Source of the DNA: Vitrella brassicaformis CCMP3155
Lineage: Eukaryota; Protista; Chromerida
DNA length: 64,000 nucleotides
Assembly (NCBI GenBank): GCA_001179505.1
Contig: CDMY01000436.1
Coordinates: forward strand, 1 to 64,000
Direction: 5' to 3'
Below the pieces are notes generated by a model. It did not search any database. It was not told the origin of the DNA and was given only the letters and a program-made list of their open reading frames with translations. The first letter of the stretch is position 1; the number at the start of each line of letters is the position of its first letter. Below, piece after piece: positions 46,429 through 63,316 of the stretch. Position numbers and translations under genes: made by a program.

Positions 46429-47687
46429 GGAGGAGAGAGGGGGGAATGGCCTAAGATAGATAAGGCCGAGGGAGCAGAGCAGCAGCAACAGCAACAGCAG
46501 CTGTGAGATGGAGAAGAGACACAGTTGGAGATTACCGGACGGAGACATGGTCTTGATGATGTGCGCATGTGTGTGTGTGTGTGCCTTCTGCAGATCGCTG
46601 CGTACATTTTATATCCGACGGCCTCTTTTCTCTACATTCCGTGTTGGCTGCCTTGTCGGCCCCGCTCGAGACAGCCGCTGTCGGTCCCGCGTAAGCAACA
46701 CAACACCAACAGAAAGGGTGTCCCATGCCTGTGTGTATGGTGTGCTCTGTTCCTGCGTGTGTGTGCTGCTGCAGGTGACGATGTGTGTGGGTGTGCCGGC
46801 CTAAGTACGTAATGCGAGGAACCCCCTAACTCGACATGCAATACGCCAGTTCAGGTGAGATGAGGACAGAGAGGATCGCATCGCGTGTCGACTCACACAC
46901 AAGTGTGCTGCTGTGCTGGGTGCAGCTGGCTTTCTTTTTGCTCACTACTGCTCCATCAAGAGGGCCCGCATTTGCTCTGTTACGCTCCATTTTGCATGAG
47001 TGAGACAGTGGCGAGTGACGTGAATAAAGTCGGCGTGTATGGACGAGTACGTGTGCGCTGTGGCTGCTGCTGGGGTGGATGGTCGATGGAGGGTGACGGG
47101 ATGGTGGGTGCACAGAATGAATGAACCAGCTCACGATGACCATTATCAAAAGAAGAAGATGTGTGCCGTTGACGCATACACATTCGAGCATCGGTCACTG
47201 CGCTCGCCACGAGCTGTCATCCATCTGGCGCTGCAGACGGATGACACCGAGTGGCCAACGACAGCAAAGAATCGCAACAATGAGCCAACGATACACACAG
47301 CATTTGTCGAGTCCATGGACGTGCTTGCACAGTGTGTCAGCCAGCCATCCTGTGTGGGCATCGTCTACTGTGACGTCAAGAGACGATTGCATCATGAGCG
47401 AAGAGATGCGACCGCCGTTGCCGACACGGAGGACGATCCACACACAGGACAGCTTGCACACATGGCATGCAGAAATCGAATTGACCGGAACACCAGAGTC
47501 TTCGTTGTTTCTGTGCCGACATCCCGACACAGACAACCCATGGAACCGAATCAGCCACACTCTTAAATGACGGCCGACTCCCTCCCTCCCTCGCTCAACA
47601 TCTACACAGCCAGCATATATATCAGCCCTCCCCTCCCTCTCCCCTTCGTATGCACACGGCCCCCTCTCCCCCCCTCCACCCCCTCTC

Positions 47688-48330
47688 TTAAACGGCATAC
47701 AGTGCGAACACGTTTGCCTGCCACGGGTGCAGCTTGAACCACACGCCCTTGTGCTGCGCCTCGCCGATCCTCCGCCCGTAGTTCTCGATGCCCAGCAGCC
47801 CGTGCAGCAGCACCTCCGGCTGGTCGCGCGTCTTGTGCGGCGGCACCGTCGCCAGATATGACGGCAGCTTGTCCGTCACCTGGCCAGGGAATTTGACGTG
47901 GCAGACGGCCTCGTGGCCGCTGAAGTTGCTCACGCACAGCAACGGGCACGCGTAGTACACGCCGCGGAATCCGGCCGGGTCGATGATGGGCCGGCCGCTC
48001 TCGTCGGTCAGCTCGGTGGTGGCCGTGGTCTCTGGCACGGCCTTGAGGGGCAGCGGTGGGGCCCAGAAGTGGGCGATGACGTTGTGCCAGGAGTCGTTGC
48101 CCTCGCCGCCGGCGTACACCTCTGCCTTGATCCAGTCGCCGTTGCGGATGGCGGGGCGGCGCAGGATGTCGAGGATGCTCATGTACAGGCCACTTGCCTC
48201 GGGGTTGGGCGCCTCGGGCGGACGCACCACTCGCTGCATCTCCAGGTGAAACTTGCGACCTGCAAAAAGGAGAGGGAGGGAGCAGGGGAAGGTGCCATCT
48301 TTGTTCCTCTCTCTCCCTCCTCTCTCTCTC

Positions 48331-48365
<35 letters not shown>

Positions 48366-49824
48366 GTTGTGCTTGCGGACCTTCGAGTTGTCCATCGTAG
48401 AAGAACCGGCAACCAGGCGACGTGAAGCAGGCGACGGCCGCGGCGCGATGCTCGTTGATGTGTTTGAAGGTGTCGGCCGAGCGGTCCTCGTCGTGATTCT
48501 CCAGGAAACGCACCAGCTTGGACTGATAGCCCAGATCTGCACCACACAACAACCAGAGAAAAAAGAGAAATACAGCCAGCCAGCCATTACTGATACATAC
48601 CCATTGGCCTGATCTCGCTTTCATCTCACTGACCTGCATGGAGGTGCATTCTGGCTTCATTGCCCTCTCTCAGCTTGAGCCGGTCGAACAGCCGTTTGTC
48701 GTAGCAGTAGTCGAAGCCCTGCTTCTGCAGGTGGAACTCCATGTCCCAGTACACCTCGGCCATGAAGATGAACTCGGGGTTCTTCGACTTGACGCTCTTG
48801 ATCGCCTTGGGCCAAAACTCCTGCACCAGCACCCACCCACCCACACACACCACACACAGGCAGAGAGAGGGGTGGTGTGCATATGTGAGCCGATCAGTGC
48901 CACTATGTCATTGTGTCACGCACCTCGAAGTGTCCGAGGTCTCTGCCCGTGGCCTGGTGGTAGAGGCCGCCCCAGGTCTTCCTGAAGATGTCGGTGGTGA
49001 CGAGCATGGCCATGTCGCACCGCACGCCGTCCGCCATGGTCGATATCTTCTCCAAAACCTCCGTCTGCTGCCGCCTCAGCGCCTCCTCGGCGTAGTTGAG
49101 CTGGCACGTGTCCTGCCACCCGTCGAAGTAGGGATCCTTGCCGTGGGCGAAGATCTTGCCATGGTGGCCCTTGAAGAAGTTCTGGGGCTGGGTGTGCAGC
49201 AGGTGGTCGTTGCCGGGGAAGATGAAGTGGGGCGAGTCCTGCACCCACGGATGGTCATGTGCGATGTGGTTCGGGATGAAGTCGACCAACAGACGCATGC
49301 CACGCTTGCCTGCTCGAGAGAGAAGACGCACATGCAGTGGGAGAAGGCTGTGGCAGGTGTGCTGGATTCCCTCCCTCCTCCCTCACCGAGTCTCATCCGC
49401 AGTGTCTTGAGGGCCTCATTGCCGCCGAAGTCGGAGTGGACGTCGTAGCCCGTGACGGAGAAGGGAGAGGAGCACACGTGGTCCTGAGGTGTCTGGGGCG
49501 AGATCTTCTTCATGTGCTTGCGGGCCTCCTCCAGAGACCTGCACGCGGCACGCATCCACGGTGACACATATAGTCCTTTCCCTCTGCCGGGCTGTGTTTC
49601 TTGCGCCGGTCGTCTCACCTCTGCCCTGTACTCCAGACGCCCAGCAGGTAGAAGATGTCGAAGCCCAGCGCCGAGATGCGGTCGAGGTACTCGTCTGGGA
49701 TGTCCTCGAGCGTCGCCTTCCTCTTGAGCACATGGCCGAGCTCGAACGTGATGATCCGCGCACTCACTTGGAACAGAGTGGGATGCTTTGGAAGGGGCCG
49801 GATAGAAGCAGATGGAGCGGACAT
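47688..49824 (-). CDS. Glycoside hydrolase family 13 (alpha-amylase family) enzyme
   Basis: Conserved regions LLVDFIPNH (I), DGVRCDMAML (II, nucleophile Asp), FMAEVYW (III, acid/base Glu), FLENHDE (IV), plus SPFSVTGYDVHSDFGG and HGKDPYFDGWQDTCQLNY; about 6 exons; no signal peptide. Confidence 0.93.
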
Positions 49825-50027: not shown

Positions 50028-53000
50028 ATGCAACGACTCGGAGATGATGCGCCCAGTGCAGCAGGAGGGGACGCCGAGAGCCGGAGCGATTCCTCATCGC
50101 AGCCTAGGCAGCTAGCGCTGCCGAGTGTAGACAGCGGCAGCAGCCCCACCAGTCAACTAAAGACTCTTGACCAGCTCAGCTGGGTCAAGTAAGCAGGAGA
50201 CGGGGGAATGGAAAGGACACGAAACAACGGCTTCACGGCTTCCTCACTGCATGTACGCCTGGTGGCTGTCCACAGCATTCCAAGGGTGCTCTATCAGGCG
50301 TTGCTGATGCTTGTAAGTGACGGTGCAGACTTTGATTCATTGGTGACTTGGATGTTGCTGCAGGACCGACGGACGAAGAAGATGGCTCAGGACATGGAGA
50401 GCACTCGAAAACTTCTCGTTGATGAGCTGAAGGAACTGAAGCAGCAGGCTGCAGCACCATCCCCTCCAACCAAGGCGCGTCCGCCCTCCCCGCACGTGCT
50501 CCTTGGCGCTGCGGGTTTTTCACCCGAGGCAAGCCGCCCACCATCGGCACGAAGTGCAGTCCGCCTCCCTCCGAAGCCATCGGGCGGTGAGGCGTCCCCC
50601 GACTCTGCACCGACGCCTCATTCTGAGGAACGACTGAATGAGATGATCGAGAAAAAGGTGGAGAAGGTCGTGGACGCGCGGCTCATCGACATCAAGAAGG
50701 CAACCAGTGAAATGGAGACAAGGTGACAGAAGGAGACTCATTTCAGGAAGTCACGGCTTTCTCACCTGGGCTTTTTGTCTTATAGGGTATATCGTGTGGA
50801 GCAGACAGCTGTGAAGTTTCTCCGTCTTGTCGACAATGTTCGCAACGATGCGTCAGCTGCCATCTCACGAATGGAGCCGATCGAAGCTGAGTTGACAGAG
50901 ATAAAGGCGCATTTGGAGGCACAGCAAAAGAAACTCGAACAGCTGGACGAGACATGCCAAACAAAGGTAAGAATGCAGGCAAGGAGAACCCTTGTGTAAT
51001 CTACCTGCTGTTTATTCATCAGGCCCTTGAGACGATGGCGAGGAGGGTTTTCTCGATTGACATGAGCATCATCCTGAAGTCAGCCTTCGATCCGCTCCTC
51101 AAGGACGTCGCTCGAGAGTCAGGCAAGAAACCGGAGGTCTCTGACCTTGTCGGCATCCAGAGAGACATCCAGGAAGGCATCAAGCAGATGATTGGCAGTA
51201 TCAAACACGCCACCGATGACATGGACAAGCTGAAGTAGGGCGAGACAAGACAAAAGACTTGCACAGGAAGAAATCATGTGTGAAATGGTCATCTGCAGGA
51301 GAGACACGACCCGCATCGATAGCCACAGCGATCAGCTGGCGAGCCTTCAGGGCATGAAAGAGACTGTGGCAGCGCTGAAAGAATCGATGGAGCACATGGC
51401 GGACATTTCACCTCGAGCAGCGATCGCAGAGACACCGTCAAGTACGGGGGCAGCTGAGAGCTCAGAGATCCTGCAAGCGATGCGTGAGGATCAGAAGAAG
51501 TTGATGGTCAAGATCTCGCAGCAGCAGAAGGCAATGGCTGAGATGCAGAAGAAGATTGAGCAGCTCGAGAGCGATGTGCGTCGCCCGAAGGCAGTAGAGG
51601 AGGCCCCGGCAGCCGTGACAGAGGCGCCGAGTGGGGAGGAAGCGATAACAGCAATCGATAAGGAAGAGATGAAGGCGCTTTTGCAGCGATGTGAGCAGCG
51701 GGCGCTGAACACGATCGAGATGACAGGTACAAAGAGAGACACACAATCAAAGTCTTTGTAAGGGCTTCCGTGTCTTGACCTCGTTCCGTGTCTTGACCTT
51801 GTGCCAGAGCAAAGGCTTCGTCAAGAGTTCAGCATCAGGCTTGGTGAGGTCCGTCGATCGTCGTTCAGCGAGACCAATCGCATGGATGAAACAGTCAAAC
51901 GACTGCAGCGAATGTGGGACGTAAGCATACACAAGCAGCGGCATCAAGCGCAGTGTCAGAGCTGCACAATGGCGATTTCTTCTCTTTTGTTCGCCTGCAG
52001 GACATGCATGAGGCATATGAGATGTCAAAACAGACAGGAGTCGATTTGTCTGGGGCGAGGCTGCACCACGTGGAAAGCCGAATCAGGAACCAAGAGGAAT
52101 ACCGCATCCGGGACCATACTGAGTATGCCATTTGAACAATGGAATGCATTCATCGCCCCGGCATTCTCTGATCGGTGCTTTCCTTCTTGCAGAATTAATG
52201 AGCGATTCGCCATGCTGGAGAACGCGCTCCAAAGCGTTATAGAGCAAGCAATGCCTCCCCATTTGCTGCCCCCTTCTCGTCGACCAAGCCAAAGCCGAAC
52301 CTCACCTGTCACTCCCCGTGACAGCACGGCTGACGTCCACGCAGCTGCAGAGGAGACGGCGCCCTTCGCTATCCCCACCGGCTTTCGCTTCAGCGTGGGC
52401 TCGGCACCCGGGACCAGAGGACGCTTGGGCTTTGGATTGGATAGGACTCATCATAGGAGTGGCATGTCTCGTCCTGCCGGTCCGTCACTGCCTGCGTCGC
52501 CGCGACAGCGGGACAAAGAAGGCGACCTACAAGACATCGCACAGCTGCGGCCATCATCGGAAAGAATGCGGACGAGAAGGGATACGACACCGGTGAGGTT
52601 CGAGGCTTCAGCAGCGCCAATGTCTGTCTCCATCCCGTCAGCGGCTCCTGAGAAAGGCGGTGAAGGGGGGTCCGCTGAGCGCATGGCTCACAAAATGTCC
52701 CTGCCGTCAACCCCCTATCGCACTCCTCGACCTCTGCGTGGCGGCATTTCGGCACCTCGGTGGTCCAACCTCGCCATGTCAACACCCACAACAGACAATG
52801 TATCGACAACCGCATCGCGAGCGGCTAGTACGGGCTTTCAGCAGTCGACTCTGCAAAGAACGCGCGTCGACACGGAGGAGAGCATAAGGGCGTCGCGTGC
52901 CAGGTCTATTGTGAACGCGTTGGAGGTGTCATCCCCTCTGACTCCCCTCCCACCTGACGGCCGCCAGCTTTTTCCCACCAGCAGGCCCAGCTCCCGCGCA

Positions 53001-53780
53001 CGGATGATGAAGGAGAGGCCGAAGACGCCGCCCGCTGTTCCTGAAGAGCCCCTGCCTCTCCTACCCGAGACACACGAGGATATGGTCGTCACCGAATCAG
53101 TGCGCCGCCCAATCGTGGAACTGACTGCCACGGGAATGCAGGTGGCAATACCCGAGGCACAACGGAGAAGAGCGAACACGCCAGCGGCGTATTCCCATAG
53201 TGCCGCCACTGAGGGGGACCAGAGCGCTGTCGGGAGCGCTGTCGGGATGAGCGAGGACATGCTAACGGAAACTGGCCGACAGCCTGACCAGCTCCAGCCG
53301 GCAAGGGACGAACCTGCAGAAGAAGTCGTGATTGAGGAGATGGTGACATTCCAGCCGATCCCATTTCCGCTAATGGAGAATCTGTTCAGGCCACAGACTG
53401 CTCCTCGGCCCGTCGGAGGCACGGAAGGTGACACACGAGAACCTGTCCAGTACCTTACCGCGACGCAGTACACAAGAGATCTGACAGCGCCTCGGGCGAA
53501 ATATTCGGCGCGGCTACTGAAGAAATTGAGCGAGTCTACGGAGACAGAATTGAGGCAGCAGAGAGGGACTTTTGTGTCGGTGCTTGGTGTGTCTACACCC
53601 GCACATACGCAGCGGTTTTGGTCCACAATTACCCCGCCACGCTTCCATCGCTCTGTGGCGGAGGGCCAAGCGCCAGAGGAGGCACGAGTGGCTCACTATC
53701 TCTCTCTCGTAAGCCCTCCTGTCTCGCCCCCGCAGACAAGCCGAGCTGTGACAGCGCCACGACCGTCATCGGCGGGATAG
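50028..53780 (+). CDS. Multi-exon coiled-coil hypothetical protein with Ser/Pro/Arg-rich C-terminal half
   Basis: MQRLGDDAPS...WVK/N|IPRVLYQALLML|DRRTKKMAQDMESTRKLLVDELKELKQ... joins in phase; heptad-rich exons from ORFs 50775, 50954, 51276; large last exon from ORF 51801..53780. 3' end may extend if a further intron exists. Confidence 0.7.
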
Positions 53781-54459
53781 ACTACACGAAGAGGAATATG
53801 TACATGACGAAGGTGCTTGATACGAAGTTAGAAAGGGATCGATAGGTCTTTCGGCGGTCGATGTTTGATCGGTCAGTCGTCACGAAGAAGAAGAGTAGTG
53901 CACGCAGACGGACACACATGAACCTACACGAAGATAAACACCTTTGCCTCTCGACCACTGATAACAAACGCGGGTTCCCATCAGTACATACACACGAGCA
54001 GACACCGCCAAACACGGCTCACTTGGACCTGACAAATCTCACCTCCACAGGGCCTACAATTTCGTGGCGTTTCGGGTGAGGGGTCATGTAATGTACCTTC
54101 TTGGAACATTTCGTAGTACCAGCTCTCTTACTACCAAAGGGAGATGCGGCAGAGAAAGTATTGGCTGCACACACACTCCACACACTCGCAAAAGAAAAGC
54201 CAGACAAACACCTATTCTTCTGGTAAGACCATAAGAGTGCACGAAATATGGACCACGGAGTTGACAACGCATACACACACAGACACACAGGCCATCATAA
54301 ATGAGCACATGAAGAGGGACACAGACACATTCAGACATACACACACACACCGGCGCAGGAAGAGAACAGGCACATGCACAAAATGCTCATTGAAGACACA
54401 CGCGCACTAACGAAACGGCGATTCATACGCCAGCTGACACCTAGCTGCCTGCGATCGCA

Positions 54460-55905
54460 TCACCTAGTTCCTGTGACCCAGTGCAAGAAGTCTTGAAACG
54501 AGCTCCCTCGACTCGGCCGTCTCTCCGACTCCTTGGCGCCCTCCTCCTGCTGCTGCTCTCTCACCATTTGGTACAGCCGCTGTGTGGCCTGCATGGTCTT
54601 GAAGAGGAGGGTCGGCACATTGACGTAGAGCGCCTTCTCTCCGTCAGCAGACGACTCGAAAACTGCCTCGGGAAACTCCTTCTTCAGCTCATCGGCCAAC
54701 ACACCTGCACATGCCACGACACCAGCGAGACATACACAGAGAGATCAACCCTCTTCCCGTCTGGAATGTGAGAACAATCCTGCTGACCGAAATGCTCTTT
54801 GCGGGAGTCGACGGACCGGTCGTCCCCGTGTTTCCACCTGTATGTGTGGAACTTGACCCTCTCGAGGGCCGCCAGAGCGCCGGCAGCCTCCCACTCAGAC
54901 TTGACTGTCACCTGTGTCTTGTATCGGCCGTCACTCAGCGTGCCGAGTTCGGTGCTGAACAGCTTGTTGGCAAAGACCTCGTTGATTGGTAGATCAATGC
55001 CGCAGCCGATGTAGCCCTCGCCCTCAGCCAGCGTGTCGGATGCTGATACACACACATATATAGGCAGTTGGCGCAAGAGATCACTGTCGCGTCTGTGTCT
55101 CTGGCATACCGCCGTCTGCGAAGTCGTATATGCCAAGAGCAGGTGTCCCCCCGCATTGGTACGTCGCCCACTGCAGGTCACCCTTGCGCGTGCCAATGAG
55201 GTCCTCCTCGACTGGCAGCACGACGTCGCCAATGGTAGCAGACGTGTCTCCCGGGACGTCATCACCGCCCGTGTCGGTTGTCCCTCCCCCTCCTCCACCG
55301 CCAGTGGGAGGCGTCCCTCCACCTCCTCCACTGCCGTCAGTGGTCGGCGAGTCAGTCGTTGTAGTTGGCCCCTCAGTTAAAGTGCTGGTGGGCGAGTCAG
55401 TCGTAGTCGTTCCGTCGCCGGTTGCTGTGCTTGTGGATGTGGTGGTAGCGGAGGGCGTAGTAGCCACCTGAGGTGTTGTGCTGATAGCTGTGACTGACGG
55501 CGTAGTCACCACAGCGACGGTATCGCCTGGCTGGTCTGGTGTGTCGCCTGGCTCATCAGCAATGGGCTCATCCACAGGGGTGTCATCAACTGTGTCGACT
55601 GGTTCGGCGACAGTATCGTCTGGTGTGCCGCCTGGCTCATCGACAGTGGGGTCGTCAACAGTTGGCTCATCGACAGTTGGGTCATCGACCGGCGTGTCGG
55701 CCACTGGGGCGGCTGGTGGCTCGTCAACTGGGGCGGCTGGTGGCTCGGCCACTGGGGCGGCTGGTGGTTCGTCAACTGGGGCTGGCTGCTCGAGTGGATC
55801 TGGCCCTGGAGGTTCTTCGCCTCCTGGAGGTTCTCCGCCTGGAGGTTGCGCCCGCACATTCGCAACGAGCAGGAAGGCAAGGATGACCAGCCGAAGGAAC
55901 TTCAT
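54460..55905 (-). CDS. Secreted Pro/Asp- and Thr-rich protein with C-terminal peptidase S74 (intramolecular chaperone autoprocessing) domain
   Basis: Signal peptide MKFLRLVILAFLLVANVRA; repeats (EPPAAPV, DDPTVDEPT), Thr/Gly-rich stalk; 3 exons with phase-1 joins (DFADG|ASDTL; EHF|GVLADE) give LSDGRYKTQV...ALAALERVKFHTYRWK...HFGVLADELKKEFPEAV...ALYVNVPTLLFKTMQATQRL, matching the S74 pattern SD.R.K...AL..L......Y.WK...IG.IAQE....PE.V. Confidence 0.85.
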
Positions 55906-55992
55906 ACGGAGAAACCTGCAAAGGCAAACACGCTGTACATTACAACGGCTGCGAGCTGAGAATTTGCGCGCGCCTGGTATCTCCCGAATAAC
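55906..55992. promoter_or_regulatory. Putative 87-bp bidirectional promoter region
   Basis: Spacer between divergent start codons 55905 (-) and 55993 (+). Confidence 0.55.
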
Positions 55993-58683
55993 ATGCTCTC
56001 CTCTGTTGTCCTCCTCGCCTTGCTGCTCGCCCTCTCTCACTCTGGCTCTTGTTTTCCCAAGATCCCCTACGCGTGCTCCAGTGAAGGACGTCCGTGGTGC
56101 GACACTCATCGTCCACTTGATGAGCGGATCAACCTCCTCATTGACGCCCTCCCCAAGCCTTCTCCCGTCACGGGCGTCCCATCAGTCCTCCGCTTCATGC
56201 TCACGGCTCGTGGTGCGGTTGGAGGAGGTGAAGACGACAAGATCGGCCTCCCGCGCTACGACTGGGGAGCCAACTGTGTGCACGGCGTCCAGAGCAGATG
56301 GTGAGCCGTGCATAGATCGCACAGGAGATGGATGGATGCACGTGGTCATTTCGCCATGCATCTGGTTTGGTCCTTGTGTGGGTGAATGCAATTGCAGTAC
56401 TTCCGATGGTTACTGCCCTACAAGCTTCCCGAATCCTATCGGCCTGGGAGCGTCATTCGATGAGCCGTCGTGGCGGAAGATGGGCAACATCATCGGTCGG
56501 GAGTTGAGAGCGCTCTACATGGCTGGTGTGGGCGAGAACAACCCGCAGAGCATCCCCAAGATCGGCCTCGACTGTTGGTCGCCCGTCATCAACATCGGCA
56601 GGGACCCCAGATGGGTAAGTGGCGTGGGCAGGCTGGTCAGTCAGTCAGTCAGCCAGTGCGTGTATGCAAGGATGCAACAATCTAATTCCTCGTATTGAGG
56701 CCAAGGGCCTCTGAAAAGAACTCTGTTACCCTTTGTCTGAGCTCATACTCGACTGCTGCATGATTTGATTTGTACATTCAACACACAGTCAGCCTGTCGC
56801 CTGATTTCCTCTTTCTTGTCTTTGTCTGTGTCCATTGACAGGGGAGGAATTCCGAGGTGCCAGGCGAAGACCCCTACCTCACCAGTCGCTTCGGCGTGGC
56901 CTATACCCAAGGCATGCAGAACGACCCAGCCGACCCGTCCCGCCTGCTGGCCATCACGACCCTCAAACACTTCGCCGCCTACTCTCTGGAGGGCAATCAC
57001 GCCTTCCTCGGGCCCGTCAATCGGCACAACTATGACGCCAACGTGACCAAATACGACCTCCTGGCAGACTACTTCCCCGCATTCGAGGCATCGGTCAGGG
57101 AGGGAGGCGCCAAGGGCATCATGTGCTCTTACAACGAGGTCAATGGGGTGCCTGCGTGTGGCTCCTCTTACCTGCTGACGGAGGTGCTCCGAGATCAGTG
57201 GGGGTTCGACGGCTATGTGACATCTGACTCTGGTGCTGTGCGTGACATCTTCACACCCCACAACTACACCAAGAGCGACGCTGAGAGTGTCCAGCTGGCG
57301 CTGCGGGCGGGCTGCGACGTCAACAGCGGCAACATTTACTTTGTGCACATGTCAGAGGCCCTCAAGGCTCGACTGATCAACACAGACGACATCTACCGGG
57401 CCCTTCATCGCACACTCAAGCTGCGCTTCCAGCTGGGCCTGTTTGACCCCATTGAGGACCAACCCTTCTGGCAGATTCCCCTCAGCGACGTGGGCAGCAA
57501 CGCGACCCAGCAATTCAACCTCCAGCTGACGGAAAGGACCTTCGTCCTTCTGCAGAACCCCAACACCATCCTCCCGCTCGGCCCGCCGGCCGGCAAGGAC
57601 AGGAAGATCGCCGTCTTGGGGCCATTTGTGGCGCGAAAGCAGGACATCATCGGCAGCTACCTCGGCCAGATCTGCCCGGGCAGGTATGGCGCCTTCAGCT
57701 GCATGCTCAGTGTGGCGGAGGGCATCGAGCAGCGCGCTAACTCGCTCGGCTGGTCTGTCGAGTCGATGGAGGGCACTGGAGTGCAGCATGGCGACCCGGC
57801 CGAGATGCAGAAAGCTGCTGACATGGCCGCGAGCGATGATGTGGACATTGTCATCGTCACTTTGGGCATCACGAAGCAAATCGAGAGCGAGAGCCGCGAT
57901 CGGAAGGATGTCCTTCTGCCACAGACGCAGCTGACCTTCGTCCACACCGTGCTGGAGGCCGTGCAGCAGGCGAACAAGAGCAAGAGAGTGGTCGTTGTGC
58001 TGTTCGGCGGTGGCTCGATCGATGTGGGCTTCCTGACGGACCAAAACGTGGCTGTGGTAATGGCCTGGTACCCATCCTTTCTCGGCCCCCAGGCACTGGC
58101 GCGTGTCGTGTTCGGCGACACGAGCCCGTCCGGCAAGCTGCCCGTCACTTTCTACCGTGCCGCTGATGTGGACAAGATGGACTTCCTCTCGATGCACCTC
58201 CACGAGGGCAGCGGTCGCACACACCGGTATTACAAGGGCGACCCTCTGTGGCCCTTCGGCCACGGGCTCACCTACACACACTTCACCATCGTCCTGAGTG
58301 GCCACACAGAGAAGAGCGGCAACACACTCGTGATTCGCGGTGACGAGAAAACGGCCCAGCTGGCAGCGGACGTGACCAATGACGGCGAGAGGGACGGGGA
58401 AGAGGTCATCATGGTATTCTTCCGGAGGACTGACAGGCCCACTCGAGTGTTCCGGCAGCTGATGTCCTTCCGTCGAGTCGCCATCAAGAAGGGCGGGCGG
58501 GAGAGAGTCACATTTAGTCTGACGAAAGAGGCCTTCAGGCTGTACTCACATGTGGACGGGGCGGCGCTGCCCCTCGCCGGCCAATACGAGGTGGAGGTCA
58601 CAAATGGTGTGGATCAGAGGGCCGTGTGCAGTGTTACGATCGAGCACAGCCAAGTGACAGACGATGTGATTGTGGCCAAGTAG
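55993..58683 (+). CDS. Secreted glycoside hydrolase family 3 (beta-xylosidase / beta-glucosidase type)
   Basis: Signal peptide MLSSVVLLALLLALSHSGSC; WCDTHRPLDERI, YDWGANCVHG, PTSFPNPIGLGASFD, WSPVINIGRDPRW|GRNSEVPGEDPYL, KHFAAYS, IMCSYNEVNGVPAC, GYVTSDSGA (nucleophile), ESESRDR, PSGKLPVTFY, PLWPFGHGLTYT and C-terminal Fn3-like RQLMSFRRV; two introns. Confidence 0.95.
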
Positions 58684-59073: not shown

Positions 59074-60449
59074 ATGGGGAGGAATCAGGAGCTGTTGGAT
59101 GCCTTGAGCAAAACCATAAGTGATGCCGAGGGCCGTGAGATCTCCGTGTCAAGGTCACGCTTCTCAAGTGGTTGAGATCTCCATGCTTTCCATGCTGTTG
59201 CAGCTGTGGCGGCCATGGCAGCTTCTTCAGTGGAGGCGGCGCCTCAACGTGCAGTGTGCAAGACGAAAACACCGGACAGAAGTCAGTTGGGATGCTGGAC
59301 GGACGCACGACGCATACGACCATCCATCTGATCTGCTGTTGTCCTGTGTGCCAGGTATTTCGTGAAGGTGGGCAGCACTCGGCAGTACGACATGCTCAAG
59401 GCCGAGTACATTGGCGTGCGTGAGATGTACAACACCAAGACAATCCGCGTACCGAAGGCCATCGGTCACGGCAGCACCGCCACACAGGCCTACGCCGTCT
59501 TCGAACACCTCAATCTATCGGGCTCTCGACGGGTGAGCAGGGCAGGAGAGGTCGTGAATGAAGGCGACACCATCTCTGCCATGCCTCTGTGTGTGTGTGG
59601 TCGTCAGGGCGGTCGTGCGTATGAGATGGGCGAGAAGCTGGCGGCCATGCATCGGCACACCTCCGCCAACGGATGCTTCGGCTTCGACATACCCAACACA
59701 TGCGGCGTGACACCCCAGCCCAACGAATGGACAGAGAGGTACATAGCCGCACACGCAGAGAGAGGCAGTCAAGCCACGAAGCCGGTGCACCGACCGCTGT
59801 GCAGCTGGCCGGTGTTCTTCGACACGTATCGACTGCACAATCTGTTCGAGAGGCTGCGCAAGAAGAGGGGCATCACATTCGCCAAGGAGGAGGAGGTGGG
59901 TGGTTCGGTGGGTAGATTGGCGGCCTCTTCAATGAACTAGAGTGTCTGGTGTTCTTGCTCAGGTTCGTTCCAAGATCAAGTCAGTTCTGGAGGACCATGT
60001 AGCCAAACACAACCCGCCTGCATCACTTGTGCATGGTGGGTTGTCAGCAGCCCTCCACACGTATGTCAACGCCTGCCTGCCATCTTTGCGTGCGGTCAGG
60101 TGACCTGTGGACGGGCAACGCCGGGTTTCTCGACACCGGCGAGGGCTGCATCTACGACCCAGCGTGTGCATACTGCGACCGCGAGTACGACCTCGCCATG
60201 ACCCACCTCTTTGGGTCGCTCCCCCGCCCCTTCTATGAGGGGTATGAGAAGGCGTGGCCGCTTCCAAAGGATGGACAGCAGCAGCGGCAGGAGATCTACA
60301 ACCTGTGAGCCAGTCAATTCTGTGCATGCGTGATGTCATGGGGGGGGCGTGATGTGTGCAGGTATCACGTGCTGAATCATGCGCTGGTGTTTGGCGGGGG
60401 CTACGTCCAGCAGGCGGAGGCGATGATGGACGAGATACTCACCTACTGA
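59074..60449 (+). CDS. Fructosamine / ketosamine-3-kinase family protein
   Basis: Spliced KYFVK...KAEYIGVREMYNTKTIRVPK, GEKLAAMH, FGFDIPNTCGVTPQPNEW, SLVHG|DLWTGN, IYDPACAYCDREYDLAMTHLFG, FYEGY, RQEIYNL|YHVLNHALVFGGGY are hallmark FN3K-family motifs. An extra upstream exon is possible. Confidence 0.93.
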
Positions 60450-61777: not shown

Positions 61778-63316
61778 TCAGCGCCTCTTCTGTGTGCCGC
61801 ACTTCTCATCCGACACGTCCAGTCGCGACGCAGTGGCACTCTGCGAGTCCGACGGCCGCGACACAGCTAGAGGACAGGACTCCGGCAGCAGACCCCGCCC
61901 AGAAAACTGGCTGCCCGACAGCCGAGCATCGCCCTCAGAGTTGCTCTCGGAACGCATCACCGCGGGGGGCAGAGCGCTGGTCGATGAAGCGGGAGGCGGC
62001 TGCTGCTGCTGCTGTTGCTGCGGGTACATGGGCGATGGTGAAGCGGCGTTGTCGCAGTCGTTGCCATTTGGCGTGGCGGGGGCGCCCTCCACCTCTGCCT
62101 CCTGCGGAGGAGGGTGCGACAGCTGCAGACCTGACCCGCCCCCCGCCGCTCCCCCCTGTTGCTGGGGGTTGACAGCCGCACCATCGGCCACCGGCTCGCC
62201 CTGCGCCACGGACGACTCCTCGCCTCCCTGGCTGCTGCTCGAACCCACGCGATTCTCCTCGTATGCGTGGAACAGCGGGCTGGGCTGTGTGGTCGTGTTT
62301 GGCGTCTCGGTGGCCTGAGGTGCTGGTGGTGCGGGGGAGGATGGGGCGGGGCCGGATGGACATGGGGAGGGTTCTTCCTCGGTGACGGCGGCCTGGGTGT
62401 CCTTCTGCTGCCGCAGGAACCAGTCGCAGTAGCGCTTAAGCTGGGCGGCCTGAACGAAATGGAATGGATGGACGGATGGATCCCACGACAAGGGAATGGG
62501 TGGATGGTCGGAGGATGTCTCGCAGCCATGATGATTGTGGTGTGTTTACCTGGTACTGTTCGGCGACTTGTTTGACGGCGAGGACGTTCTGCTGAGTGAT
62601 GCGCTGGTAGAGCTCCTGCTCACACATCTCCTTGACGGGCTCCAACATAAACTCATCAGACACCTGCACATACACATAGACACACCAACCACACACACAT
62701 CACTGGCTGGTCTCGCACACAAGCCACCTAATCTATCCCTCCCCTACTCTGCGCTCACCTGCAGCAGCTCGACCAGGAACGGTATGTCGTTGGGGTCGCC
62801 CATCAGGCCGCCCGCCGCCCCAGCACCAGCACCAGCCCCACCACTGCCCCCACCGGCCGCAGCAGCAGCAGCCGGGCTGGGCCCGCTGGATGCGCCCATG
62901 CGGTATGCGAAGGGCTGTGAGTTGTTGATGGATAGGGAAGAGAGTGAGAGCGGCAGGGGGTTGTAGATGGACGAGAGGGCGAATGGGCGTGGGGGCATGA
63001 CTGAGGGGCGGTAGCGGAACTTGACCTCGCCCGAGTACAGGAAGTCCATCATCGACTCAAACACCTCGTAGCGCACACCGGGGATCTGCACACATACATA
63101 CAAGGGGTGAATGGATGGATGGATGAATTGATGGCCTTCTCTGTCCGGGTGTGTGGGATGTGTGTGAGTGCTTTGTTTGTTGACCTCGATTTCCTTCTCG
63201 GATGACTCCTTCATGCCGCTGGTGAACATGGCGCGGAATCGGTCGCTCAGCAGACACAGAATGATGCGGTGGGCGTAGTACTGACGCCCCTCCACAATCT
63301 AGTACGACACAAGACA

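What the first reader, a model, noticed from the sequence alone, without database searches (positions are those of the whole stretch)
54460..55905. Secreted eukaryotic mucin-like protein carrying a phage-tail-type S74 autocleaving chaperone
Seen: signal peptide, acidic Pro repeats, a Thr/Gly stalk, a short beta-rich segment, then LSDGRYK with Ser (codon 54933-54935) and Lys five residues later (54918-54920), followed by ALAAL..Y.WK, HFGVLADE, FPEAV and a terminal helix. The gene has two spliceosomal introns, so it is an integrated nuclear gene. Established: S74/ICD domains trimerise, chaperone folding of triple beta-helix fibres in phage tailspikes and fibres (K1F endosialidase, GA-1 neck appendage, T5 L-fibre) and self-cleave via a Ser-Lys dyad; the known eukaryotic carriers are MYRF/MrfA transcription factors. 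Inference: this is a secreted trimeric fibre or adhesin that matures by autocleavage just before SDGRYK, an architecture unlike MYRF (no Ndt80 domain, no C-terminal TM).
Basis: partly seen in the sequence, partly recalled or inferred. Interest (0 to 1): 0.88.

Follow-up and report, generated by a model that had tools for sequence, protein, structure and literature searches.

The report
Secreted self-cleaving phage-type cap protein, Vitrella
A coral-associated alga (Vitrella brassicaformis) expresses a real, spliced nuclear gene for a secreted, mucin-like protein that ends in the self-cutting, three-chain "chaperone" domain known from phage tail fibres and the animal factor MYRF. It is one member of an undescribed gene family in this alga, and its function is untested.

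Summary
A three-exon gene on the minus strand (55905-54460) encodes a 431-aa protein identical to a public Vitrella brassicaformis model. An RNA-derived contig skips both GT..AG introns exactly, including the EHF|GVLADE junction.

The spliced protein matches Pfam Peptidase_S74 over the whole model (E 1.6e-10, 41.6 bits against a cut-off of 22). The Ser302/Lys307 dyad is intact. A model of residues 225-431 matches only solved ICA structures (MyRF, GA-1, endoNF, T5).

It is not MYRF: it has no Ndt80 domain and no transmembrane segment. It is also not a resident virus gene. Its neighbours are cellular and its GC3 is host-like. A phase-1 intron inside the S74 domain is shared with two paralogues on other contigs, and the three group together in a tree. 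The nearest outsiders, at about 30% identity, are bacterial secreted tail-fibre-domain proteins.

The passenger is not a long fibre. It consists of about 205 acidic Pro/Thr/Gly-rich residues plus about 77 beta-rich residues.

Secretion, trimerisation and cleavage at L301|S302 are inferred, not shown.

This scan had already noted the same family on other DNA of this genome (32 notes). UniRef already labels the protein by domain. S74 fibres are also published for polinton-like viruses integrated in protist genomes. I rate it a new variant of a known kind, of moderate interest.

The parts
54460..55905 (-). Whole coding gene (ATG to stop): 3 exons, 431 codons. Equals P0001 of Vitrella brassicaformis CCMP3155.
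55110..55905 (-). Exon 1 (codons 1-265 plus 1 nt)
   Evidence: RNA contig joint
55043..55109 (-). Intron 1: 67 nt, GT..AG, phase 1
   Evidence: skipped in X6 record 17
54788..55042 (-). Exon 2
54705..54787 (-). Intron 2: 83 nt, GT..AG, phase 1, inside the S74 domain at HF|GVLA. The position is shared with paralogues P0082 and P0020.
54460..54704 (-). Exon 3, including the TGA stop at 54460-54462
55849..55905 (-). Predicted signal peptide, residues 1-19 (basic start, Leu/Val/Ala-rich core, VRA|Q)
   Evidence: Sequence reading. It is the only strongly hydrophobic 19-mer in the protein. Both paralogues also start with such a leader.
55501..55848 (-). Acidic proline-rich repeat region, residues 20-135 (net charge -32)
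55234..55500 (-). Thr/Ser-rich (136-190) and Gly/Thr-rich (191-224) low-complexity stalk
54936..55233 (-). Beta-rich pre-S74 segment, residues 225-301 (interrupted by intron 1). It carries Cys251 and Cys279 and the GYIGCG stalk motif.
54918..54935 (-). SDGRYK: Ser302 (54933-54935) and Lys307 (54918-54920), the predicted catalytic dyad. The predicted scissile bond is L301|S302.
   Evidence: Mechanism taken from PMC8326128.
54661..54935 (-). Peptidase_S74 (PF13884) match, residues 302-365 (interrupted by intron 2)
54520..54618 (-). Long C-terminal alpha-helix, residues about 380-412 (predicted trimerising coiled coil of the ICA domain)
   Evidence: this part of the model is mostly at pLDDT 79-95; compare PMC8326128
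55906..55936 (-). Minimum 5' UTR covered by the RNA contig
   Evidence: X6 record 21

Best explanation
This is a domesticated nuclear gene of Vitrella brassicaformis for a secretory-pathway protein. Its C-terminal 130 residues are a genuine intramolecular chaperone / autocleavage domain (Peptidase_S74, ICA).

Proposed course of events:
1. The signal peptide (residues 1-19) takes the chain into the ER. This is inferred.
2. Three chains associate through the ICA domain and its long C-terminal helix. That association templates a short trimeric beta structure from the 77 residues just upstream (225-301), which keep the G-x-[IV]-G-x-G stalk motif of bacterial homologues and MYRF. This is inferred by homology.
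3. Once assembled, the Ser302-Lys307 dyad cuts the L301|S302 bond and frees a 15-kDa C-terminal fragment. This is inferred.
4. The mature product is a trimer of residues 20-301 (27.7 kDa per chain before glycosylation, pI about 4). It is a small beta 'knot' holding three long, acidic, Pro/Thr/Gly-rich and probably O-glycosylated arms. I read this as an extracellular-matrix, cell-wall or adhesive glycoprotein rather than a rigid fibre. This reading of the function is speculative.

What is shown: the gene is transcribed and spliced, the domain is S74, and the gene belongs to an intron-sharing paralogue family that entered the lineage once. The source was most likely a bacterial (or viral) secreted tail-fibre-domain protein.
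For: Gene and transcript:
- The splice model equals the public protein.
- Both introns are removed in an RNA contig at depth about 100.

Domain identity:
- PF13884 matches the full model at E 1.6e-10.
- S, D, R, K, G, A, P and V at the near-invariant columns are all present.
- The AlphaFold2 model built with 50 homologues has pLDDT 74 overall and mostly 79-95 across the S74 part.
- The only significant PDB fold matches are ICA structures: 7dc3 MyRF (E 1.6e-5, TM by target 0.60), 3gud, 3gw6 and 4uw8.
- BFVD and AFDB matches are dominated by entries annotated as S74, tail-fibre or endosialidase-chaperone proteins.
- phmmer against PDB finds the GA-1 neck appendage chaperone.

Host gene rather than virus or contaminant:
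- GC3 is host-like (0.755 against 0.796 in the neighbouring GH3 gene).
- Neighbours are cellular: GH3, fructosamine kinase, BTB.

Family:
- Paralogues P0082 (309 aa) and P0020 (215 aa) have signal peptides, the same two Cys, and SDxxYK.
- They share the phase-1 intron at HF|GV.
- They group with this protein in the tree (100/95 and 89/42).

Mechanism of the family: Ser-Lys dyad, cleavage N-terminal to the Ser, and trimerisation by the C-terminal coiled coil, from PMC8326128 and PMC3742443.
Against: - There is no experimental evidence here for secretion, trimerisation or cleavage.
- The signal peptide was judged by eye and hydrophobicity only.
- The structure model is a monomer, and the pre-S74 segment is only at pLDDT about 50-64.
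- The near-invariant Gln of the IAQE motif (47 of 50 homologues) is Asp355 here and Glu in P0082. The effect is unknown.
- The passenger is mostly disordered low-complexity sequence, unlike the beta-helical passengers that known ICA domains chaperone.
- The scan's notes say other family members have lost the Lys (not tested by me). So the family may use the domain as a permanent scaffold.
Confidence: 0.6

Rival explanations
1. Uncleaved scaffold: the S74 domain is kept as a permanent C-terminal trimerisation module and does not cut itself off, or cuts inefficiently. The functional molecule would then be the full 412-residue trimer.
For: The conserved Gln of IAQE is replaced by Asp355. The passenger is short or disordered, so there is little beta-helix to 'chaperone'. 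In two paralogues the ICA part is larger than the passenger. An earlier follow-up in this genome describes relatives lacking the lysine (untested here).
Against: Ser302, Asp303, Arg305 and Lys307 are all intact and sit at the canonical spacing in this gene and in P0082. P0020 keeps Ser, Asp and Lys but has Lys in place of the Arg. In MyRF, cleavage does not depend on the upstream stalk (PMC8326128).
Confidence: 0.2
2. Endogenous virus gene: the locus is a fibre gene of an integrated polinton-like virus, virophage or giant virus, either still viral or a recent relic, rather than a host gene.
For: PF13884-capped fibre genes are reported as ubiquitous in PLVs integrated in protist genomes (PMC12220804). 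Giant-virus S74 clusters lie near this protein in the Atlas and BFVD searches.
Against: It has two spliceosomal introns, one shared with paralogues on other contigs. It carries a signal peptide. No viral hallmark domain appears in ORFs from 41.5 to 63.3 kb. GC3 is host-like. The best IMG/VR matches are only 26-27% identical, no closer than bacterial proteins at about 30-33%. There is no tblastn hit in 50,697 phage records. A viral route for the original transfer is not excluded.
Confidence: 0.07
3. Bacterial contamination or a mis-annotated gene model.
For: The nearest non-Vitrella relatives are bacterial metagenome proteins.
Against: The contig is 379,606 bp with eukaryotic neighbours. The introns are removed in RNA. 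The same sequence is held by several independent runs. Identity to any bacterial protein is no more than about 33%.
Confidence: 0.01

Closest known systems
Bacterial secreted 'tail fiber domain-containing' / Peptidase_S74 proteins (e.g. Haliscomenobacter MBK6949332.1; metagenomic P0007/P0016/P0035/P0084; Bacteroidota proteins with a Por_Secre_tail signal)
   Same: They are the closest in sequence (about 30-33% identity, E 1e-7 to 1e-3). HMMER alignments run from the G-x-V-G-I-G stalk motif, and often 20-50 residues further upstream, through SDxRxK, HxGxIAQE, PE.V and the C-terminal helix. They are secreted cellular proteins rather than virion parts; the P0084 context is a P-type ATPase and a PAS gene.
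   Different: The bacterial proteins usually have long beta-rich or repeat passengers (YadA_head, LVIVD). They have no introns and no mucin-like region. Their Cys pairs lie at other columns. They have Gln, not Asp, in IAQE.
Phage tailspike and tail-fibre C-terminal intramolecular chaperone domains (K1F endoNF 3GW6, GA-1 gp12 3GUD, T5 pb1 4UW8, S16 gp37 6F45)
   Same: Same Pfam family and fold, the same Ser-Lys dyad, and the same C-terminal position.
   Different: There is no virion context and no triple beta-helix or enzyme passenger. This protein enters the eukaryotic secretory pathway. No tblastn match was found in the phage collection at E 1e-3.
MYRF / Dictyostelium MrfA (ICA domain, PDB 7DC3)
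   Same: The only functionally studied cellular eukaryotic carriers found in the papers consulted. 7DC3 is the best structural match. Both have a short stalk motif directly upstream of the cleavage Ser.
   Different: This protein has no Ndt80 DNA-binding domain, no MYRF_ICA or C2 regions and no transmembrane segment. Here the ICA would act in the ER lumen or extracellular space, not on the cytosolic face. There is no phmmer hit to 7DC3 at E<=1, so it is an independent capture rather than a MYRF derivative.
S74-capped fibre proteins of polinton-like viruses and giant viruses of protists (PMC12220804; HaV53_86, PMC13659346)
   Same: The S74 domain sits at the C-terminus of an adhesive or low-complexity passenger, encoded in or integrated into protist DNA.
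   Different: Those are virus genes in PLV or NCLDV contexts with laminin_G3, collagen or adenovirus-fibre modules. This is an intron-bearing host gene among cellular genes with a signal peptide.

Membership tests
Peptidase_S74 / intramolecular chaperone autocleavage domain (PF13884, MEROPS S74) | Significant full-length match to the family profile | tested here: met
   E 1.6e-10, 41.6 bits (cut-off 22), profile positions 1-57 of 58, residues 302-365
Peptidase_S74 / intramolecular chaperone autocleavage domain (PF13884, MEROPS S74) | Catalytic Ser and Lys five residues apart in S-D-x-R-x-K | tested here: met
   S302, D303, R305 and K307. The same columns hold S 49/50, D 49/50, R 46/50 and K 49/50 in homologues.
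Peptidase_S74 / intramolecular chaperone autocleavage domain (PF13884, MEROPS S74) | Fold of solved ICA/CIMCD structures, including the long C-terminal helix | tested here: met
   Foldseek against PDB: 7dc3 E 1.6e-5 (TM by target 0.60), 3gud, 3gw6, 4uw8; nothing else below E 0.5. Helix 380-412 is predicted with high confidence over most of its length.
Peptidase_S74 / intramolecular chaperone autocleavage domain (PF13884, MEROPS S74) | C-terminal to a trimeric beta-structured passenger | tested here: inconclusive
   The domain is C-terminal, and the 77 upstream residues are predicted beta and keep the stalk motif. However, pLDDT there is only about 50-64 and the rest of the passenger is low-complexity.
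Peptidase_S74 / intramolecular chaperone autocleavage domain (PF13884, MEROPS S74) | Trimerisation-dependent self-cleavage | not testable with these tools
   Needs expression of wild type against S302A and K307A, or a multimer model.
MYRF / MrfA membrane-bound transcription factors | Ndt80/PhoG DNA-binding domain N-terminal to the ICA | tested here: not met
   PF13884 is the only Pfam hit at E<=1.
MYRF / MrfA membrane-bound transcription factors | Transmembrane segment C-terminal to the ICA | tested here: not met
   The only hydrophobic 19-mers are at residues 1-6.
Integrated polinton-like virus / giant-virus fibre gene | Viral hallmark genes (capsid, packaging ATPase, integrase) beside it | tested here: not met
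   Pfam scan of 30 ORFs between 41.5 and 63.3 kb found only GH3, fructosamine kinase, BTB and weak amylase and zinc-knuckle hits. ORF-based scans can miss spliced genes.
Integrated polinton-like virus / giant-virus fibre gene | Closer to viral than to cellular homologues | tested here: not met
   IMG/VR best match 26-27% identity; phage tblastn none; bacterial proteins 30-33%.
Mucin / hydroxyproline-rich-glycoprotein-like secreted proteins | Signal peptide plus long Pro/Thr/Ser-rich low-complexity region | tested here: met
   Composition and tandem repeats. The Extensin_1 Pfam hit is not significant (E 0.12). Glycosylation is not testable.

The most novel reading that the evidence does not exclude
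Vitrella (and perhaps other myzozoan alveolates) has captured a bacterial or viral fibre-capping module once. It then expanded it into a family of intron-bearing, signal-peptide-led genes. Their products trimerise and cut themselves in the secretory pathway. This would be a second, independent eukaryotic domestication of the ICA domain besides MYRF, used here to build extracellular trimers (wall, sheath or adhesion/recognition molecules) with interchangeable N-terminal passengers, of which this mucin-like one is a variant.
Probability: 0.5. Interest if true: 0.7.

Novelty: new variant of a known kind. Interest (0 to 1): 0.55.

Why it matters
In the literature I consulted, the ICA/S74 domain has been studied functionally in cellular eukaryotes only as part of MYRF-type transcription factors, where its phage ancestry is a well-known curiosity. 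A second, independent capture working on the lumenal/extracellular side would show that the module is a portable 'assemble, then cut' device for eukaryotes too. This capture sits in an expressed, intron-sharing gene family of a free-living relative of apicomplexans.

It would also give a tractable small system (73-282-residue passengers) for studying trimerisation-gated autoproteolysis. And it would point to unknown surface or wall biology in chromerids.

The limits on excitement are real. The domain call is already in UniRef. S74-capped fibres are already reported from viruses integrated in protist genomes. This locus is one of many such genes in the same genome already flagged by this scan. 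No function is known.

Tried and rejected
- Single-sequence AlphaFold2 of residues 225-431 was too poor to use (pLDDT 47). It was replaced by a run with a 50-sequence alignment.
- Word-indexed protein search with the C-terminal region found only the protein itself.
- The exhaustive phmmer search found only Vitrella sequences below E 1e-10.
- The genome-contig scan with the three-paralogue alignment found no bacterial or archaeal relative carrying the Vitrella-specific motifs.
- The metagenome scan gave one locus (L010). It is a chance match in an alternative frame of an unrelated gene, with no S74 following.
- tblastn against 50,697 phage records gave no match.
- MYRF membership was rejected: no Ndt80 domain and no TM segment.
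- Plastid targeting was considered and rejected. The region after the leader is strongly acidic (net -32), unlike a transit peptide.
- The chromerid genome paper and its 16 held supplements do not mention S74, endosialidase or phage.
- I could not include MYRF, PLV or giant-virus sequences in the tree because no referenced copies were available. The donor lineage is therefore unresolved.

Full report
**What is there.** Reading the minus strand of 54200-56200 and assembling the exons in a script gives a 1296-nt coding sequence.
- Exon 1 is 55905-55110, exon 2 is 55042-54788, and exon 3 is 54704-54460.
- The introns are 67 nt and 83 nt. Both are GT..AG and both are phase 1.
- The 431-aa product is identical to P0001. 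That is an 'unnamed protein product' of Vitrella brassicaformis CCMP3155 on a 379,606-bp contig, which UniRef already calls 'Peptidase S74 domain-containing protein'.

**Transcription and splicing.** Of the public runs holding this stretch, X3 and X4 carry it unspliced, like DNA. X6 behaves as RNA. Its 4577-nt contig (word depth about 100) skips exactly 55043-55109 and 54705-54787, and residual depth inside the introns is 3-18. Independently, exon 2 alone scores 22.6 bits against PF13884 (profile positions 1-41), while the spliced protein scores 41.6 bits over positions 1-57 of 58.

**Domain identity.**
- PF13884 is the only Pfam family hit (E 1.6e-10).
- In an alignment with 49 homologues, the columns for S302, D303, R305, K307, G351, A354, P362 and V365 are invariant or nearly so, and this protein has the consensus residue at each.
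- The one departure is the Gln of the IAQE motif (47 of 50 homologues), which is Asp355 here.
- An AlphaFold2 model made with that alignment reaches pLDDT 74 overall and mostly 79-95 in the S74 part.
- Foldseek against the PDB returns only ICA structures as significant matches: MyRF 7dc3 (E 1.6e-5), GA-1 3gud, endoNF 3gw6 and T5 4uw8.
- BFVD and AlphaFold-DB searches return mostly proteins annotated as S74, tail-fibre or endosialidase-chaperone proteins.
- phmmer against PDB sequences finds the GA-1 chaperone (E 3.8e-4) but not MyRF. The domain is therefore not specifically MYRF-like in sequence.

**Relatives.**
- An exhaustive phmmer search of 1.84 billion cluster representatives gives 75 hits at E<=1e-3. 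Only two are below 1e-10: the protein itself and P0002.
- P0002 is a fragment of P0082, a 309-aa Vitrella paralogue also seen in two MMETSP-type transcript contigs.
- P0020 (215 aa) is a third Vitrella member.
- The other hits that could be traced (about 30% identity) are bacterial 'tail fiber domain-containing' or adhesin-like proteins, from genomes, MAGs and metagenomes. One of these has a bacterial gene context.
- IMG/VR viral contigs reach only 26-27% identity, and the phage collection gives no tblastn hit.

**A host gene family, not a resident virus.**
- All three Vitrella proteins begin with a hydrophobic leader. They share two Cys in the pre-S74 segment and keep SDxxYK.
- Mapping each protein onto its genomic locus shows a phase-1 intron at the same place inside the S74 domain in all three: HF|GVLA, QF|GVLA and HI|GVSA. 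A second phase-1 intron, before G[YM][IL]GCG, is shared by P0082 and P0020.
- In a maximum-likelihood tree the three group together (100/95 for P0001+P0082; 89/42 with P0020). The sister group is unresolved.
- The paralogues lie on other contigs among cellular genes.
- Around this gene I found GH3, fructosamine kinase and BTB domains, and no viral hallmark.
- GC3 of the C-terminal half (0.755) matches the neighbouring GH3 exon (0.796).
- The window contains no second S74 copy.
- Together these argue for one old acquisition followed by intron gain and duplication.
- The scan's own notebook lists 32 notes on S74 genes in this genome. They include giant repeat-bearing ones and ones said to lack the Lys, and two follow-ups call it an undescribed family. 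I verified only three members plus one decayed transcribed copy (L011).

**The passenger.**
- After the leader come 116 acidic Pro-rich residues (net charge -32; 8-aa and 5-aa repeats). A Thr/Ser block follows (T 44%), and then a Gly/Thr block (G 47%).
- Only residues 225-301 are predicted beta (pLDDT about 50-64).
- HMMER alignments to bacterial homologues start 25-60 residues before the cleavage Ser, and the G-x-[IV]-G-x-G stalk motif is conserved. The transferred unit was therefore 'short stalk + ICA'.
- The mucin-like part is specific to this paralogue. P0082 and P0020 have passengers of only about 108 and about 73 residues.
- 'Fibre' is therefore not an apt description. A trimeric knot with three flexible acidic arms is closer.

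**Mechanism.**
- From the family's established behaviour, cleavage falls N-terminal to the dyad Ser, the dyad is active only in the trimer, and the C-terminal coiled coil drives trimerisation (PMC8326128; PMC3742443).
- On that basis I infer ER entry, trimerisation, and cleavage at L301|S302.
- This would release a 15.0-kDa fragment and leave a 27.7-kDa (unglycosylated) acidic chain in a trimer.
- None of these steps is shown. The Asp355 substitution and the largely disordered passenger keep open a rival in which the domain stays attached as a scaffold.

**Comparison with what is known.** The protein is a member of Peptidase_S74 by every feature I could test. It is not a MYRF family member: it has no Ndt80 domain and no TM segment. 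It is not a current viral fibre gene. S74-capped fibre genes are reported as ubiquitous in polinton-like viruses integrated in protist genomes (PMC12220804) and occur in giant viruses. The presence of S74 in protist DNA is therefore not new in itself. The searched literature held no description of intron-bearing, signal-peptide-led cellular S74 genes in algae or chromerids.

**Verdict.** This is a real and correctly read feature, and a new variant of a known kind. It is of moderate interest (0.55) rather than 0.88. The domain call is already public, the locus is one of many in this genome, and the function is unknown.

Noticed in passing
window 55993-58683 (+), first exon 55993-56304: A secreted-looking GH3 glycoside hydrolase gene (Glyco_hydro_3 N and C domains plus Fn3-like; own N-terminal leader) lies head to head with the S74 gene. 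The two ATGs are 87 bp apart. RNA contigs leave at most a 55-bp gap (55937-55991), which suggests a very compact bidirectional promoter for two secretory proteins.
   Followed up: partly
L011 (Vitrella transcript contig, sample 3300017148), about 1727-2357: This contig carries a frameshifted remnant similar to the P0082 paralogue's S74 domain and C-terminal helix, downstream of an unrelated 483-codon ORF. No SDxRxK motif is readable in frame. It appears to be a transcribed decayed family member.
   Followed up: partly
L008:8001-9139 and L009:8001-8990: Paralogues P0082 (3 introns) and P0020 (5 introns) share intron positions with each other and with the window gene. All introns are 64-83 nt.
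   Followed up: yes
window 55154-55214 and 55703-55763: Assembly graphs of all runs break here, and word depth rises two- to three-fold. These are the Gly-rich and Pro-repeat coding stretches, so they are probably repeated elsewhere in the genome or within the gene.
   Followed up: no
window 50466-54300 (approx.): The RNA contig carrying the spliced S74 transcript continues about 3.8 kb past the stop codon into the region of a 659-codon plus-strand ORF (51801-53780) that has no Pfam hit. This is probably convergent transcripts merged by an unstranded assembly.
   Followed up: no
window 59362-59937 (+), 62747-63295 (-), 47605-48660 (-): Fructosamine-kinase, BTB/POZ and a weak alpha-amylase-like ORF: ordinary cellular neighbours.
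   Followed up: no
AlphaFold-DB cluster hits (ranks 2, 3, 29): Several short 'Peptidase S74 domain-containing' entries have accession styles typical of protist genome or transcriptome submissions. Organism names were withheld. This hints that other protists may carry standalone S74 proteins.
   Followed up: no
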